From IMG/VR virus record IMGVR_UViG_3300024308_000188, positions 124,001 through 188,000 of that record: a DNA stretch of 64,000 nucleotides; one strand, written 5' to 3'. The notes under the pieces were generated by a model that ran no database searches, was not told the DNA's origin, and worked only from the letters and a program-made list of their open reading frames with translations. Of this stretch, positions 128-14,875 are shown piece by piece; the stretch's first letter is position 1, and each line of letters starts with the position of its first letter. Made by a program: the position numbers and the translations under genes.

Positions 128-129
128 AT

Positions 130-480
130 TTCCCTGACCTGCCAAACTTTGCATGTATTTGTTTGGCAACTAAACTCAGGAACTGGATTGTGTCTGCGCT
201 ACATCCTTTCCGATAGTTTGTGTAAGAATTTCTTACGGTCTTTTTTATTTCGGCACTCTAGCGTCCTCTAAGTGCTGTTTCTGGTCGCAAGACTGGTTTT
301 ACAAAACAAGCTTATTCGTTTGCATCGACATGCGAGATACGTGAGTAGCTGTCATGAGAAATTCTTTGTTTTGTATTAGCGCCACCGAATCTGATTGGCG
401 ATCTGATCACGTTTATCAAAGCATATAAGATAGATGGTTATAGTGTAATGCTTTCCACTAGAAGCTGTTTGTTGAAATTG
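130..480 (+). ncRNA. candidate structured non-coding RNA region A
   Basis: No ORF of 60 aa or more; consecutive stems TGCCAAAC/GTTTGGCA, GGAT/ATCC, CGGCACT/AGTGCTG, CTGGTC-GCAA-GACTGG, TTGCAT/ATGCGA, CGCCA/TGGCG. Confidence 0.45.
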
Positions 481-524
481 CTTTTCAGTGACTTTCCATG
501 TTTCAACAGGTAAACATGGTTAAT

Positions 525-599
<75 letters not shown>

Positions 600-618
600 T
601 TTTCAACAGGTAACAAAA

Positions 619-702
619 ATGCTTCCAGATTATTCAGAATTAAAACCCTATCTGCTTTCTCTTGTTTTAGTTTTTGTTATTTTGATTGCGCTTAGTTTTT
701 GA
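619..702 (+). CDS. 27 aa single-TM membrane peptide
   Basis: MLPDYSELKPYLLSLVLVFVILIALSF; AGGT upstream of ATG; below the ORF track cutoff. Confidence 0.45.
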   Translation: MLPDYSELKPYLLSLVLVFVILIALSF

Positions 703-832
703 TTCCAACACTAAACTTATTTCAGTTAGCTAAGTAACTTAAGATAGTCCTGCACTTAGCCGCGTAGGAGACTATGAAAAGTTTGTGGTTTAAGTGTATC
801 ACTGAACAGGAATCTTTATTTGGTAATCATTT

Positions 833-1165
833 ATGGAACCAGAGTTTTTAAATTGCCCTGAATTTTATTCTAAACATTTTCTTGAACTTAACAATAAAGA
901 AAAATTCTGCGCTTTTTATTGGAGTCAGATGCGAAGATTTACAACGCTTAAGCAAGCTTTAACTTCTTTACCTGCAAATAGAATACCTTACAGATGCGCT
1001 TTAATTGTTTTGCGCGAAAAGAAATGTCGTTGGCCTGAAGTAGAATTCTTGATAGCCCAAACTTCTTACTCAAAAGGTTTGTATTTGAATTACATGAAAA
1101 TTTTAGTTGAACGAAACCAATTGACTACAGAAGAATTTGAAGATATTTTGAATATGTTAAAGTAG
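833..1165 (+). CDS. hypothetical protein
   Basis: 110 aa ORF with phage-like composition. Confidence 0.6.
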   Translation: MEPEFLNCPEFYSKHFLELNNKEKFCAFYWSQMRRFTTLKQALTSLPANRIPYRCALIVLREKKCRWPEVEFLIAQTSYSKGLYLNYMKILVERNQLTTEEFEDILNMLK

Positions 1166-1174
1166 ATTCCACTT

Positions 1175-1640
1175 TAGATCTGCAAGCAGAGACATTTTTT
1201 GTCTTAGGTCAGAACAGCCGTTGCTTGTGCGCTGGTATGCAGTGCAAAGTTTATTATGTCAAGCTAGATCCCTTGACTAGACTTTATACGAAGTAGCCTA
1301 ACTTCGAGATTTTTAGTGGAATCTCCTTTAACATCTTTGTCTGTTCGATCTCCTTTTAGGTACGTGGGGTTCCAAGCAAGTTGTGTCGAACAGGCATTCT
1401 AATTTTTCGCGGCATTAGTTTAAGCAGTCCTTGAAAAAGTTTTGTGTGAGGCGGATTCTTCCTTGCCGCTGTGCTGATGAACTTATAGAGGAAAAACAAC
1501 GAGACAATACTTGCGTCCCTCCAAGTCGGTTAGTATTGTGAGTATCTCACGCACTCATTCGTTATTTCAAAACATGAACGTGCTGACGCGAACTCCCGCT
1601 GAGAGTACAAACCTTAATCTAGCATTAAGCAATGTTTAGA
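1175..1640 (+). ncRNA. candidate large structured non-coding RNA region B (~460 nt)
   Basis: No ORF; at least 12 stems tile the region, e.g. CTGTTCGA/TCGAACAG, ACAATACT/AGTATTGT, GTCAAG/CTTGAC, CGAAGT/ACTTCG, CTTAAT/ATTAAG; G-U pairs favour the + strand. Confidence 0.55.
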
Positions 1641-1973
1641 CTTTGAATTGTTGTAGGTTTTTGGACTTTTTTCCTTGCTCCAATTCTTGGGTCGTGTATT
1701 TGAAATGCCGCTATACAGGAATATTCATGGTAACTATATTCATCTTTTTTCTAACGATTTGTATTAACCGCGAAAACAATTTACGGCGGTCATCCGTAGA
1801 AAGTTTTCGTATAACAACTAACATTCAACGCATAACAGATTACTTTGACCTTAAAGGTTGGTTAACTGTTCGCGTTGTACAAGTTGAGCATAAACCTGCT
1901 CACTATAAGCACTCGTTGATATGATGCTTGGCGATTTGTTATTTACATGACTCCTTATCTTGTTGAGAGGGTA

Positions 1974-2177
1974 AGAACAAATCTCGGTAGCCGTAATACC
2001 GATATTAAATAATCCAGCAGGTGGGTTTGTTGTTCGCATTTTGGACAAGGAAACCAAACCCACCGAATCAAATAGATTTTTGTTCTGACGGTAAGATTCA
2101 ACTTTCGCACTGGCTTTGTTCGAGCACCAGTACATATTACAGTCTGTTGCGTTTTGCCGTCAGAACAAAAATCTATT
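1974..2177 (+). ncRNA. structured element C with a 21 bp perfect inverted repeat
   Basis: AATAGATTTTTGTTCTGACGG (2071-2091) pairs with 2157-2177; GGTGGGTTTG (2020-2029) pairs with 2055-2064. Confidence 0.5.
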
Positions 2178-2183
2178 AAACAC

Positions 2184-2209
2184 AAGGCCACTTTGCTGTG
2201 GCCTTTTTT
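2184..2209 (+). terminator. intrinsic terminator
   Basis: AAGGCCAC-tttgct-GTGGCCTT followed by TTTT. Confidence 0.8.
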
Positions 2210-2231
2210 GATCTTAACTGGGGAAATAACT

Positions 2232-2867
2232 ATGCAAGGTAAATTTTTTGTACTTGAAGGATTGGATGGTGTTGGTAAAAGTGAACAAGCAAAAATATTG
2301 ACGGCAAATCTTACTAAAATATTTGGCCCGACTATTCAAGTACGCGAACCTGGAGGAACTCCGATTGCAGAACAGATACGTACTGTGGTAAAAGGTAATG
2401 CTAATAACTCTGATGAAAAGTTTACTGTAGAAGCAGAAACTCTTTTAATGTTTGCTGCCAGAGCGCAATTGGTTCCTTACGTAAGATCACAACTTGCCGC
2501 TGGCGTTAATGTTGTTGCAGATCGTTGGGATTTTTCAACAAGAGCTTTTCAGTGTGGAGGTAAAGGTTTTCCACTTGAGCACTTTTATAACCTGCGTAAA
2601 ATACTGAGTTTAGATACCTTGGTTCCTGATATGATTTTTTACGGAACTAACTCAGGCAAAGTAAAAGAGCCTGAAGATCGAATTGAGTTTGAGTATTTTG
2701 AGTTCAGAGAAAAGATTGGTGCCGAATATGACCGCATGTTTGCTCTTAGCAATATGGATCATACTGTTGCGAAAAGTTTAGTCACTTTCGACATAAATGG
2801 AGTTAGTATTGAAGATACTGCGGAAATGATTTTAATGTGTGCGCGTAAAGCTTTTGGTGATGTATGA
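2232..2867 (+). CDS. tmk: thymidylate kinase
   Basis: FVLEGLDGVGKS P-loop, REPGGT, LLMFAARAQ, DRWDFST motifs; start moved to MQGKF after a GGGA RBS. Confidence 0.93.
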   Translation: MQGKFFVLEGLDGVGKSEQAKILTANLTKIFGPTIQVREPGGTPIAEQIRTVVKGNANNSDEKFTVEAETLLMFAARAQLVPYVRSQLAAGVNVVADRWDFSTRAFQCGGKGFPLEHFYNLRKILSLDTLVPDMIFYGTNSGKVKEPEDRIEFEYFEFREKIGAEYDRMFALSNMDHTVAKSLVTFDINGVSIEDTAEMILMCARKAFGDV

Positions 2868-13255: not shown

Positions 13256-14875
13256 ATGAGCAAAGTCACTTCATCATTAAGTTTCGTTTTATCTGCAATG
13301 GCGTTAGAAATTTGCGCTACTCCAGAAGCTTTTCGCACACAAGCAAAAGCTTCAAAAGTTCCACTGAATTTAATTAACGATGTTTGTGTTCAAGCACAAA
13401 TTCTCGTTGAGAATTTAACTGAGAAATCTTCACTGGCCAATTCTGAACAAAAAAGTTTGTCAGATACTCTGTCTGGCTTTCGTGCCTTTCATGTTCGTCA
13501 CTGCCAAGGTAAAGCAGAAATCCGCGAACCTCTTCGCAATTTTTGTGAATCGGCTGTTATTAAACAGACCAATACTGTTCGTAGTTCTAACAACAGCCTT
13601 GTTCTTCGCATGGTCGATCTTATTGATCAGTACGGCTTGGTAGGAAAGTTTATTACCACTCAGGAAATGGATAAACTTATGTTTCTTGATAAGATTCCAA
13701 TGGTGTGTCAGGCATTTGCGGTACATGGTAAAGAAACTCTGATGTATCAAATAAATCGTCTGGATGTTACTTCAGAAATTTCCGACGAATTTGTTGAGGC
13801 AGCCATTTGGTTAAATCAGACTTATTACAAGTCTGTGGACATCGGTGAATTAACTGATGCTTCACACATTCATCAGAAAGTTTCTACTATGATCGACTTC
13901 ATGGCAAACTATGCCAGAAGTAAATCTAAGTTCTATTCTTATATCCTGAACTTTAAATATCGCTATATTAATTCGTATATGGAACATCCAGACGCGAATG
14001 AAGCCAAAAAGTACAGAGAGTTATCAGCATTTATTTTAAACAACTTTGCAAAAGCCGAGGCCGCTATGAATGAAGAACAAAAAGCTCCAAGCAGTTCAAG
14101 TAAAAAACTTGAATTGGCATCTTTGTTGCGTGAGCCGACTGAAGATAAAAAAGTCTCAGAGCAAAAACAACTTCCACTGGAATCAGATTCCATTCCAGTT
14201 GATGAACTTGTTGAAGTTCCAGCAGAAAGTGCTTCTGAAAAAGTTCGGCCTGTTAAAAAGCCAAAAAGAATTAAACTAAATCCAAAGTTCAAAAAAGAAG
14301 AAAAGCCTGTTGTAATTCGCGGTGTCGGCCCTGCTTTAATGTCAATGGTTTCCAGCTTTAACGCCACGCATTTAGATACGCCAAGGCTTATGCTTATTGA
14401 TCTGGATGAAGATACCCAGTCTGATATTATTTCAGTCTTGGGTCAAACTTCACTTTACGGCTTCGTTCTGGATATTCCAGATACTGAATTTTTTGAAGAG
14501 CAGAGCTATACTTTTGCAGAATCTTTGGACGGCAAAGTTTATATGTTCGGCATTCATTATGTTTCATCTAAAGGCCGTGTTGGTCTGACAATACAAAACT
14601 TTATACAACAAGTTGAAACAGCGGCAGATGCTATCAGAGTTTTCTACAACTATCTGGTTGAAAGTCAGACGCGAATCTCTGGAGAACCTTTGGTTGTAGA
14701 AGTTAGCAAACGCACAAAAGTTGGTACTGAAAAACCCGTGTACGAAAATTGTGATGAATACTCAGAAAACTTCATTTTGGAATTTGCTCATTTGGGGCTG
14801 ATTACTTATGAAGAAGAAGTTGTGAAAACAACTCGTGCTGTTTTCAAAGTACCGGCAACTGTTTCTGTAGAATAA
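13256..14875 (+). CDS. hypothetical protein, 539 aa, with a charged disordered linker
   Basis: GAGGA RBS; long ORF. Confidence 0.8.
   Translation: MSKVTSSLSFVLSAMALEICATPEAFRTQAKASKVPLNLINDVCVQAQILVENLTEKSSLANSEQKSLSDTLSGFRAFHVRHCQGKAEIREPLRNFCESAVIKQTNTVRSSNNSLVLRMVDLIDQYGLVGKFITTQEMDKLMFLDKIPMVCQAFAVHGKETLMYQINRLDVTSEISDEFVEAAIWLNQTYYKSVDIGELTDASHIHQKVSTMIDFMANYARSKSKFYSYILNFKYRYINSYMEHPDANEAKKYRELSAFILNNFAKAEAAMNEEQKAPSSSSKKLELASLLREPTEDKKVSEQKQLPLESDSIPVDELVEVPAESASEKVRPVKKPKRIKLNPKFKKEEKPVVIRGVGPALMSMVSSFNATHLDTPRLMLIDLDEDTQSDIISVLGQTSLYGFVLDIPDTEFFEEQSYTFAESLDGKVYMFGIHYVSSKGRVGLTIQNFIQQVETAADAIRVFYNYLVESQTRISGEPLVVEVSKRTKVGTEKPVYENCDEYSENFILEFAHLGLITYEEEVVKTTRAVFKVPATVSVE

What the first reader, a model, noticed from the sequence alone, without database searches (positions are those of the whole stretch)
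1175..1640. Candidate novel large ornate RNA (~460 nt), region B
No ORF, yet almost every base lies in a stem: GCGCTG/CAGTGC (1229-1245); AAAGTTTA+GTCAAG/CTTGAC+TAGACTTT (1246-1285); CGAAGT/ACTTCG; GAGATT/AATCTC; a 10 bp GTCTGTTCGA/TCGAACAGGC helix closing a multibranch domain (1339-1395); CTAAT/ATTAG; GCGG/CCGC; ACAATACT/AGTATTGT (1504-1539); AAACAT/ATGTTT closing ACTC/GAGT and CTTAAT/ATTAAG (1570-1637). I found no tmRNA, RNase P, SRP or group I/II intron signature, so it may be an undescribed phage RNA class.
Basis: partly seen in the sequence, partly recalled or inferred. Interest (0 to 1): 0.8.

Follow-up and report, generated by a model that had tools for sequence, protein, structure and literature searches.

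The report
Conserved structured RNA region, jumbo phage
A stretch of about 1 kb without genes in an uncultured jumbo phage, next to a tRNA gene, is kept far more constant than neutral DNA and changes in ways that preserve RNA stems.

Summary
It is real, but it is not the 460-nt unit described.

**Conservation.** Against the relative L005, 4-fold sites of flanking genes are only 54% identical. Non-coding 1166-2231 is 84% identical, and 1497-1605 is invariant.

**Structure.** A fold predicted from the window alone keeps its pairs in L005: 14 double compensatory changes against about 4 in permutations (P<0.0005), and 28 broken pairs against about 54.
- 1160-1400: supported.
- 1401-1640: no support.
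- 1641-2231, outside the finding: strongest support.

Three are supported and four are contradicted. Segment 1560-1577 pairs with 1692-1710, not with 1632-1637.

**Second clade.** A second phage clade (L008) keeps three modules, with altered helices, in the same order upstream of tmk.

**Known families.** Nothing in Rfam matches at E<10.

**Limits.** An intrinsic terminator at 2184-2212 ends the unit. The function is unknown.

**Best reading.** This is a new family of large structured phage RNA in a tRNA island, comparable in kind to GOLLD and ROOL but not a member of either.

The parts
1164..1325 (+). 5' domain. A long closing helix (1164-1181 with 1307-1325) encloses a multi-way junction of hairpins at 1182-1228 (with inner 1189-1205), 1229-1245, 1246-1285 and 1289-1306. 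It starts at the stop codon of ORF 833-1165.
   Evidence: z -6.9 on the + strand against -4.2 on the - strand. There are 2 double compensatory and 7 one-sided pair-preserving changes against L005, and 2 breaks. For 1160-1400, P(doubles)=0.006. No counterpart was detected in L008.
1338..1396 (+). Long hairpin capped by a G-rich loop (GGGG then UUCC).
   Evidence: z -3.8. Changes 1345:1389 UA>CG, 1346:1388 CG>UA and 1340:1394 UG>UA in L005. Model R1 aligns L008 14141-14259 over its full length, with the stem replaced by a different paired sequence; E 0.007 in a 1-kb search. nhmmer E 0.018.
1408..1423 (+). Conserved 16-nt island CGCRGCATTAGTTTAA, shared with the L008 clade.
   Evidence: Identical apart from one R position in window, L005 and L008, at the same spacing from GGGGTTCC.
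1424..1445 (+). Small hairpin.
   Evidence: RNAalifold pairs 1425:1444 CG>UA (double change) and 1424:1445 GU>AU in L005.
1497..1605 (+). Invariant 109-nt block, weakly structured. It contains a pyrimidine-rich loop motif GCGUCCCUCCAAGU.
   Evidence: 0 changes in L001 and L005 while neutral sites are 46% diverged. z 0.05. No covariation information.
1556..1714 (+). Domain closed by the long-range helix 1560-1577 / 1692-1710, with internal hairpins 1580-1608, 1618-1640 and 1641-1690. It straddles the finding's right edge.
   Evidence: The helix is predicted independently in window and L008. The duplex is kept with changed sequence (AUUUCAAA/UUUGAAAU against AUUUCACA/UGUGAAAU, with different extensions). 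Model R2, built from the window clade only, finds L008 14359-14518 at 20.1 bits, E 3e-5.
1770..1810 (+). 15-bp hairpin, the best covarying helix.
   Evidence: 3 double and 5 one-sided pair-preserving changes and 0 broken against L005. z -3.5.
1826..1941 (+). Group of hairpins: 1826-1877, 1842-1862, 1882-1904 and 1906-1930.
   Evidence: Double changes at 1834:1870 and 1883:1903. z -3.7 for 1820-1945.
1948..2070 (+). Hairpins 1954-1975, 1980-2006 and 2020-2064.
   Evidence: Double changes at 1985:2001, 2021:2063, 2022:2062 and 2029:2055. z -3.2 on the + strand against -0.8 on the - strand.
2071..2177 (+). 31-bp hairpin whose apical part carries GUUCGAG...CAUAUUACAG. It is a candidate double-strand-specific processing site or 3' protective structure.
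   Evidence: dG -44 kcal/mol. z -7.0. 2088:2160 AU>GC in L005. The homologous shorter hairpin in L008 at 14579-14650 has a U-A to G-C change and the same apical motifs.
2184..2212 (+). Intrinsic terminator: an 8-bp G+C-rich stem followed by a T6 run. It ends the non-coding unit 20 nt before the tmk start codon.
   Evidence: It is conserved in L005. Equivalent terminators lie just before tmk in L009 (read by eye in the sequence, not scanned) and L022.
128..832 (+). Context: the upstream conserved non-coding stretch ('region A') with tRNA-Gly(UCC) at 525-599, part of the same island.
   Evidence: tRNA. 128-524 is 89% identical to L005 against 54% at neutral sites. Covariation is weak: 3 doubles against 0.6 in slid controls.
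833..1165 (+). Context: a real 110-aa protein gene embedded in the island.
   Evidence: It evolves as coding sequence: runs of synonymous changes, aa identity 73%, 4-fold identity 48%. Homologues sit in unrelated phage contexts.
2232..2867 (+). Context: thymidylate kinase gene, the conserved downstream neighbour of the non-coding island in related phages.
   Evidence: Pfam PF02223 at 1.4e-22. Synteny in L005, L008, L009 and L022/23.

Best explanation
Window positions about 1164-2212 (+ strand) are a non-coding, structured RNA segment of about 1.05 kb. It lies in a 2.1-kb tRNA-associated RNA island (128-2231) of an uncultured jumbo phage.

Shown:
- It does not code for protein.
- It is under strong purifying selection.
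- It folds into a chain of separately closed domains whose pairing is maintained by compensatory substitutions: a 5' multi-way junction at 1164-1325; a G-loop hairpin at 1338-1396; a domain closed by 1560-1577/1692-1710; an array of hairpins at 1770-2064; and a 31-bp hairpin at 2071-2177.
- It ends at an intrinsic terminator just before tmk.
- Three of its modules recur, in the same order and with altered helices, in a second phage clade.

Inferred:
- It is made as one primary transcript running rightward, read through from the tRNA/ORF110 unit.
- The 31-bp hairpin and the terminator define or protect its 3' end and separate it from tmk mRNA.
- It acts in trans as a stable RNA that binds a host or phage partner. 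The invariant, weakly structured 109-nt block (1497-1605) is the likely contact surface.

It belongs to no described RNA family. In kind it resembles the large phage RNAs found beside tRNA genes (GOLLD, ROOL).
For: Not coding:
- Stops occur in all frames.
- Indels against L005 are not multiples of 3.

Selection:
- 4-fold sites of six flanking genes are 54% identical between window and L005.
- 1166-2231 is 84% identical, 1491-1610 is 97%, 2061-2231 is 94% and 1166-1335 is 90%.
- Variable and invariant blocks alternate at a scale of 50-100 nt.

Structure:
- The window-only MFE has 349 pairs. In L005, 275 are unchanged, 25 kept with a one-sided change, 14 double compensatory and 28 broken.
- Slid controls give a mean of 2.0 doubles (maximum 4) and 54 broken.
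- Block-wise permutations give about 4 doubles and 52-57 broken, P<0.0005.
- A coding control shows no signal: 8 doubles against 6.3.
- Domain z-scores reach -7, and the + strand is more negative than the - strand in every domain except the 3' hairpin 2066-2182 (-7.0 against -7.8) and the invariant block 1497-1610 (about 0 on both strands).
- In helices that also carry double changes, all 8 one-sided changes involve G.U on the + strand and none is an A.C.

Second clade:
- L008 (RecA 86%, tmk 46% aa) has matches to models built only from the window clade: R2 at 20.1 bits, E 3e-5, and R1 at E 0.007, both in 1-kb searches with roughly calibrated E-values.
- L008 also has the 3' hairpin homologue.

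Unit boundaries:
- The terminator lies at 2184-2212.
- Terminators sit before tmk in L009 (by eye) and L022.
- The gap opens with the phage group's recurrent promoter-like motif aaaaCTGTAAATA in L008, L009 and L010.

No known family.
Against:
- Only two clades (four distinct sequences) carry it. The covariation rests mainly on one pairwise comparison.
- The middle third of the finding (1401-1640) has no structural support.
- A strand test on G.U against A.C mismatches is clear in the window (22:4) but not in L005 (17:19) or L008 (9:16).
- No promoter was found in the window clade.
- No helix links distant domains, so a single large RNA is not demonstrated.
- The proposed function has no direct evidence.
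Confidence: 0.6

Rival explanations
1. The stretch is not one large RNA. It is a cluster of several small stable RNAs and processing hairpins, cut out of a polycistronic precursor together with the tRNA, as in the tRNA region of phage T4 with its extra small stable RNAs (from general knowledge).
For: - All supported helices are local or span 160 nt or less, and no long-range pairing ties the domains together.
- The domains have separate strong z-scores, with unstructured spacers between them.
- L008 keeps only some modules, and the spacing between them differs by hundreds of nt.
- A 31-bp duplex suitable for a double-strand-specific nuclease is present.
Against: - No internal terminator or promoter is conserved. 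The U-run after 1289-1306 is interrupted in L005.
- The module order is conserved between clades.
- The spacers, including 1497-1605, are themselves invariant.
Confidence: 0.25
2. It is a cis-acting untranslated region: either a long structured 3' UTR of ORF110 mRNA or a leader controlling read-through into tmk and the downstream genes.
For: - The 5' domain begins exactly at the ORF110 stop codon.
- The terminator sits 20 nt before the tmk start codon with no room for a promoter after it, so tmk needs read-through.
- A long non-coding stretch lies directly upstream of tmk in four lineages.
- Weak sub-threshold resemblance to leader architectures: Phe_leader at 27 bits against a cut-off of 55.
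Against: - About 1 kb with roughly 20 conserved helices is far beyond known leaders.
- L008 has the RNA without ORF110 and without the terminator.
- No alternative anti-terminator pairing is evident.
- No riboswitch family matches.
Confidence: 0.1
3. It is a DNA-level element, such as a replication origin or recombination site with hairpin-forming repeats, rather than an RNA.
For: - It lies among replication and recombination genes: RecA, primase, nuclease, tmk and topoisomerase.
- Watson-Crick compensatory changes are strand-symmetric: 16 doubles when the - strand is folded.
- The G.U strand test is ambiguous in L005 and L008.
Against: - There are no iterons or other significant direct repeats.
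- There is no AT-rich dip or skew inflection.
- One-sided changes in the best helices all pass through G.U on the + strand.
- + strand z-scores are consistently stronger than - strand ones.
- Promoter-like and terminator signals bracket the unit in relatives.
Confidence: 0.04
4. There is no function. The stems are chance, and the high identity reflects recent recombination between the phages.
For: - Whole-region z is only -1.47.
- tmk next door is also more similar than other genes, with 4-fold identity 67%.
- L001 is identical over 975-1621.
Against: - Conserved and variable blocks interleave at 50-100 nt.
- Compensatory changes far exceed the nulls.
- Sequence islands and helices are retained in a clade whose tmk is only 46% identical.
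Confidence: 0.02

Closest known systems
[quoted passage not shown]
   Same: - Large (over 800 nt) multi-domain non-coding RNA.
- Encoded by phages and prophages, often at tRNA islands; tRNAs sometimes lie inside its linker.
- A conserved 3' part and a less conserved 5' part (bioRxiv 10.1101/2024.12.08.627333).

Here, a tRNA-Gly lies in the same island. The 3' modules (1338-2177) are shared with the L008 clade, while the 5' domain is not.
   Different: - No match to the Rfam model, even at E<10 with permissive filters.
- No shared sequence motifs are known.
- A protein gene is embedded in the island.
- Multimeric cage formation has not been tested.
ROOL RNA (Rumen-Originating, Ornate, Large; Rfam RF03087, accession from memory)
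   Same: - Large ornate RNA of phages and prophages near tRNA islands.
- Unknown function and no known protein partner.
   Different: - No covariance-model match.
- ROOL is about 580 nt with several pseudoknots. No pseudoknot has been shown here, and the structured stretch is about 1 kb.
Small stable RNAs co-transcribed with phage tRNA clusters (phage T4 tRNA region; from general knowledge)
   Same: - Non-coding RNAs in the same transcription unit as phage tRNAs.
- Released by processing.
- Function long unknown.
   Different: The T4 RNAs are about 120-140 nt each. Here the conserved structured sequence is about ten times longer and has domain-closing long-range helices.

Membership tests
GOLLD RNA | Match to the family covariance model (Rfam) | tested here: not met
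   cmscan found no hit at gathering score, nor at E<=10 on 2.2 kb and on 0.85 kb.
GOLLD RNA | Phage-encoded and located at or next to tRNA genes | tested here: met
   Jumbo-phage terminase and portal genes are present. tRNA-Gly at 525-599 lies in the same non-coding island.
GOLLD RNA | Over 800 nt, with a conserved 3' part and a variable 5' part | tested here: inconclusive
   The pattern is analogous: modules in 1338-2177 recur in L008, while the 5' domain 1164-1325 does not. The transcript length is unknown.
GOLLD / ROOL RNA | Self-assembly into a homo-oligomeric cage | not testable with these tools
   This needs in-vitro transcription and cryo-EM or native gels.
ROOL RNA | Match to the family covariance model (Rfam) | tested here: not met
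   No hit.
tRNA / tRNA-like element | Cloverleaf recognised by ARAGORN or Rfam RF00005 | tested here: not met
   Only the tRNA-Gly at 525-599 is found. Nothing is found in 1166-2231, even at E<=10.
Group I / group II intron | Ribozyme core matching the family models, and an interrupted host gene | tested here: not met
   There is no model hit. tmk starts intact with its P-loop at 2232, and the upstream ORF ends normally.
tmRNA, RNase P RNA, SRP RNA, 6S RNA | Match to the family models | tested here: not met
Riboswitch or transcription-attenuation leader | Match to a known aptamer or leader model, and a mutually exclusive terminator/anti-terminator pairing | tested here: not met
   The best match is Phe_leader at 27.2 bits against a cut-off of 55. 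No alternative pairing with the terminator stem 2184-2205 was seen in the folds.
Intrinsic (rho-independent) terminator | G+C-rich hairpin directly followed by a U-run | tested here: met
   2184-2205 has 8 bp, 5 of them G-C, followed by TTTTTT. It is conserved in L005.
Double-strand-specific (RNase III-type) processing hairpin | About 20 bp or more of nearly continuous duplex | tested here: met
   2071-2102 pairs with 2146-2177 over 31 bp at -44 kcal/mol. Cleavage itself cannot be tested here.

The most novel reading that the evidence does not exclude
The whole 2.1-kb island would be one giant phage RNA of a new class: region A, the embedded tRNA-Gly, and the 1.05-kb region B. It would be functionally analogous to GOLLD, a large multi-domain RNA carrying a tRNA in its linker and possibly assembling into a higher-order particle. 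Its invariant 109-nt block would be the binding surface for a host target. On this reading, the equally long but unrelated non-coding cassettes that sit between a phage promoter motif and a terminator upstream of tmk in other lineages of this jumbo-phage group would be fast-evolving counterparts of the same functional locus.
Probability: 0.2. Interest if true: 0.8.

Novelty: new member of a known kind. Interest (0 to 1): 0.58.

Why it matters
Large, elaborately folded non-coding RNAs without known function are rare, and several of the known ones (GOLLD, ROOL) are phage RNAs beside tRNA genes.

This would be a further, unrelated family in jumbo phages. It has about 20 conserved helices and an ultra-conserved block that looks unstructured. 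That would give a new object for structural work and for asking what such RNAs do during infection.

It would also flag a recurrent locus upstream of tmk in this phage group, bounded by a promoter-like motif and a terminator, that holds long non-coding cassettes of lineage-specific sequence.

Tried and rejected
Searches for more homologues, all without result:
- megablast and blastn against 50,697 phage records: only the tRNA matched.
- Exact or degenerate DNA motif scans of IMG/VR, JGI metagenomes and GTDB genomes: only the window's own contig and L001, or chance hits that nhmmer rejected.
- Protein-anchored retrieval through tmk, ORF110, ORF140 and RecA: this yielded L005, L013 (region A only) and the L008 clade, of which L014-L019 are 99.8-100% identical copies. 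It also yielded the more distant L009, L010, L022/23 and phage NCTB, whose gaps show no homology by blastn, nhmmer or models R1-R3.

Other points:
- The R3 hit in L009 (20 bits) is only a generic long hairpin aligned through a local end, and it scores on both strands. I rejected it as homology.
- Hidden coding sequence or a pseudogene was rejected.
- Paralogy between region A and region B was rejected, apart from one short loop motif.
- Complementarity of the invariant block to other parts of the window gave nothing significant.
- A kissing interaction between the GGGG loop and the CCC-containing loop, and pairing between the region A loop and 1486-1492, were considered. They were dropped as too short or not conserved in L005.
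- ORF110 gave no functional lead.
- The count of structure pairs was not used, because it would have needed a dot-bracket string of about 1,100 characters to be typed. Equivalent counts with slid and permutation controls were computed in scripts.

Full report
**What the window is**

The window is part of IMG/VR contig 3300024308_000188, the same as metagenome contig Ga0247725_1000036, 214.5 kb. Its 983-aa terminase, portal protein and split topoisomerase II place it among jumbo phages. The nearest cultured relatives are the Erwinia Y3 / Dickeya JA group, at only about 40% terminase identity. All genes near the finding are on the + strand.

Between a 140-aa ORF that ends at 127 and thymidylate kinase (tmk, 2232-2867; Pfam 1.4e-22) lie 2.1 kb with only two recognisable genes:
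- tRNA-Gly(UCC) at 525-599
- a 110-aa ORF at 833-1165

The finding (1175-1640) is the first part of the non-coding stretch 1166-2231.

**Checking the observation**

No frame is open: stops occur in all six frames.

The claim that almost every base is paired does not hold for the region as a whole. The minimum-free-energy fold of 1175-1640 is only marginally better than dinucleotide shuffles (z -1.47; - strand -0.37). Broken down by domain, the picture is uneven:

| Segment | z (+ strand) |
|---|---|
| 1160-1330 | -6.9 |
| 1336-1398 | -3.8 |
| 1399-1555 | -1.1 |
| 1497-1610 | 0.05 |
| 1556-1714 | -1.5 |
| 1765-1815 | -3.5 |
| 1820-1945 | -3.7 |
| 1948-2070 | -3.2 |
| 2066-2182 | -7.0 |
| three coding controls | about 0 |

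The segments from 1765 onward lie beyond the finding. The + strand is more negative than the - strand in every domain except the 3' hairpin 2066-2182 (-7.0 against -7.8) and the invariant block 1497-1610 (about 0 on both strands).

**Relatives**

Protein-anchored searches gave these relatives:
- L001: 97% nucleotide identity, with no difference at all between 975 and 1621.
- L005: a 329-kb ENA contig with the same gene order and tmk 90% aa identity.
- L013: covers region A only.
- The L008 clade: RecA 86% but tmk only 46% aa identical to the window clade. It has a 953-nt gap upstream of tmk, without the tRNA and without ORF110. It was seen in eight further sequencing runs, six of them holding the gap at 99.8-100% identity.
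- More distant relatives (L009, L010, L022/L023, phage NCTB): these also have 0.9-1.4 kb without genes near tmk or tRNAs. No homology to the window's RNA was detectable in them by blastn, nhmmer or covariance models.

**Selection**

Between window and L005, 4-fold degenerate sites of six flanking genes are only 54% identical (127 of 234). ORF110 behaves as a protein gene (aa 73%, 4-fold 48%). By contrast, the non-coding stretch 1166-2231 is 84% identical. Nearly invariant and variable blocks alternate along it:

| Segment | Identity to L005 |
|---|---|
| 1166-1335 | 90% |
| 1336-1490 | 72% |
| 1491-1610 | 97% (1497-1605 invariant) |
| 1611-1680 | 70% |
| 1681-1760 | 85% |
| 1761-1840 | 68% |
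| 1841-1960 | 87% |
| 1961-2060 | 77% |
| 2061-2231 | 94% |

Indels are 1, 2 and 4 nt long. The constraint therefore acts on the nucleotide sequence, not on a reading frame.

**Conserved pairing**

To avoid circularity, I folded the window sequence alone (1151-2231, maximum span 200) and asked what L005 does to each of the 349 predicted pairs:

| | Unchanged | One-sided, kept | Double compensatory | Broken |
|---|---|---|---|---|
| Observed | 275 | 25 | 14 | 28 |
| 3' partner slid by 1-8 nt | | | mean 2.0 (max 4) | mean 54 |
| Permutation within 50-nt or 100-nt blocks (2000 trials) | | | about 4 | 52-57 |

In the permutations, no trial reached either observed value (P<0.0005). The same procedure on the coding stretch tmk+ORF147 shows no signal: 8 doubles against 6.3, and 85 broken against 79.

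By segment:

| Segment | Doubles, observed / null | Broken, observed / null | P |
|---|---|---|---|
| 1160-1400 | 4 / 0.8 | 6 / 11.4 | 0.006 (doubles), 0.012 (broken) |
| 1401-1640 | 0 / 0.6 | 9 / 11.4 | no support |
| 1641-2231 | 10 / 2.3 | 12 / 27 | <0.0005 |

Helices with double compensatory changes are:
- 1189-1205
- 1338-1396
- 1424-1445 (from the alignment fold)
- 1770-1810 (3 doubles, 5 singles, none broken)
- 1826-1877
- 1882-1904
- 1980-2006
- 2020-2064 (3 doubles)
- the 31-bp hairpin 2071-2177

- Supported: 1229-1245, 1246-1285 and 1339-1395.
- Invariant, so untested: 1289-1306, CTAAT/ATTAG, GCGG/CCGC and 1504-1539.
- Contradicted by L005: GAGATT/AATCTC, ACTC/GAGT and AAACAT/ATGTTT. 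CTTAAT/ATTAAG has one pair kept and one broken.

Two long-range pairings replace the contradicted ones:
- 1164-1181 pairs with 1307-1325 and closes a multi-way junction that begins at the ORF110 stop codon. The T1311C change turns a G.U into G-C there.
- 1560-1577 pairs with 1692-1710. This domain therefore runs past the finding's right edge.

**The second clade**

L008 shares only short sequence islands with the window:
- GGGGTTCC followed 34-38 nt later by CGCRGCATTAGTTTAA.
- AUUUCAMA, and 125-129 nt later UKUGAAAUGCYGC.
- GUUCGAG...CAUAUUACAG inside a terminal long hairpin.

These islands occur in the same order.

The L008 sequence folded on its own predicts the equivalent long-range helix, 14370-14385 with 14492-14508, and a long hairpin capped by GGGG. 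The duplexes are maintained with changed sequence.

Covariance models built from the window clade alone find L008 when every position is scored:
- R2 (1552-1716) gives 20.1 bits, E 3e-5, full length.
- R1 (1334-1442) gives 11.7 bits, E 0.007. Its 12-bp stem is aligned to a different, mostly paired sequence.

These E-values are for 1-kb searches and the models were roughly calibrated. nhmmer supports the R1 module independently (E 0.018). The 5' domain (model R3) has no counterpart in L008.

**Strand and unit boundaries**

The + strand is favoured by:
- gene and tRNA orientation;
- lower folding energy (-325 against -283 kcal/mol);
- more negative z-scores in most domains;
- the one-sided changes in well-supported helices, all 8 of which pass through G.U on the + strand.

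A cruder count of G.U against A.C mismatches is clear in the window (22:4) but not in L005 or L008. The strand is therefore probable, not proven.

A canonical intrinsic terminator at 2184-2205 plus a T6 run closes the stretch 20 nt before the tmk start codon. It is conserved in L005. L022 has an equivalent terminator before tmk, and the L009 sequence shows one by eye. L008 has none.

In L008, L009 and L010 the gap opens with aaaaCTGTAAATA. This motif recurs 30-45 nt upstream of start codons throughout this phage group, and five times on the + strand of the window, so it is probably the group's own promoter signal. The window clade has no such motif at the island, and no conserved sigma-70-like promoter precedes region B. 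Its transcription start is unknown.

**Known families**

Rfam 15 gives only the tRNA at gathering score. At E<=10, on 2.2 kb and on 0.85 kb, it gives only meaningless sub-threshold matches. The relatives' loci likewise show only tRNAs. That result excludes, as far as covariance models can:
- tmRNA, RNase P, SRP and 6S RNA;
- group I and II introns and small ribozymes;
- riboswitches;
- GOLLD, ROOL, OLE, HEARO and raiA (their presence in Rfam is from my own knowledge).

The closest known things in kind are GOLLD and ROOL. These are large, ornate RNAs of unknown function, encoded by phages and prophages, often at tRNA islands. GOLLD has a conserved 3' part and a variable 5' part, and sometimes a tRNA in its linker (bioRxiv 10.1101/2024.12.08.627333). 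The present RNA shares those descriptive traits but fails the membership test.

**How it most likely works**

Shown:
- A non-coding sequence under strong constraint.
- About 20 helices, many of them with compensatory support.
- Modular conservation in a second clade.
- A terminator at the 3' end.

Inferred:
- Rightward transcription as one precursor together with the tRNA and ORF110.
- The 31-bp hairpin, conserved in both clades and the only element separating the RNA from tmk in L008, serves as a processing or protective 3' structure.
- The mature RNA, or RNAs, act in trans.
- The 109-nt invariant block, which has no predicted stability and no variation, is the best candidate for a surface that contacts a partner (protein, RNA or another copy of itself).

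I put about 0.85 on 'functional structured RNA sequence', about 0.4 on 'one RNA of at least 0.85 kb', and low confidence on any specific function.

**Limits**

- Only four distinct sequences in two clades carry the element.
- Scans of IMG/VR, JGI metagenomes and GTDB genomes found no more.

Noticed in passing
window 501-513 and 601-613 (also 470-477): An exact 13-nt direct repeat, TTTCAACAGGTAA, flanks tRNA-Gly. In L005 both copies carry the same C-to-T change. The repeat is complementary to 470-477 (TGTTGAAA), and the change turns G-C into G.U. This could be a precursor-processing stem around the tRNA, or a footprint of the tRNA's insertion.
   Followed up: partly
window 128-524 and 600-832: The upstream non-coding 'region A' is also strongly conserved (89% against 54% at neutral sites). 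Its covariation is only weak: 3 doubles against 0.6. Its hairpin loop at 259-273 (GCGUCCUCUAAGU) resembles the loop motif at 1511-1526 in the invariant block of region B.
   Followed up: partly
window 26570, 26932, 31983, 39364, 50233 (+ strand); L005, L008, L009, L010, L022: The motif (aaaa)CTGTAAATA recurs, mostly in intergenic DNA and in several cases 30-45 nt upstream of a start codon, for example before the portal gene. It is probably the promoter of this jumbo-phage group. It opens the non-coding gap in L008, L009 and L010.
   Followed up: partly
window 833-1165: The 110-aa ORF embedded in the RNA island is a real gene of unknown function (helical, no family). Its homologues (32-50% identity) sit in unrelated phage contexts, one directly followed by its own terminator (L011). 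It is absent from L008, so it looks like an inserted passenger gene. L005 has a 29-nt insertion just upstream of its start codon.
   Followed up: partly
L009 15051-15937; L010 13017-14013; L022 5370-6778; L023 5233-6646; L043 15031-15914: Related jumbo phages carry equally long (0.9-1.4 kb) gene-free stretches at the corresponding place, mostly just upstream of tmk and often ending in a long hairpin plus terminator. They have no detectable sequence similarity to the window's RNA. This may be a fast-evolving RNA locus.
   Followed up: partly
L010 13465-13495 and 13750-13778: Two tRNA-like 3' halves (T-arm plus acceptor strand, GGTTCGAATCC / GGTTCGATTCC) lie upstream of tRNA-Lys. ARAGORN and Rfam did not call them. 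They may be aberrant or decayed tRNAs.
   Followed up: no
relatives: P0122 (the 319.5-kb JGI contig that also holds L001), L009 10001-12538, L014 821-3742, L022 270-2801: The RecA/UvsX-like recombinase carries an intein in several relatives, with a LAGLIDADG domain in L014. It has none in L005, L008 or L023.
   Followed up: no
window 2232-2867 against L008 14670-15278: tmk is only 46% identical between clades whose RecA is 86% identical. The island and its neighbour therefore evolve, or are exchanged, much faster than the replication core.
   Followed up: no
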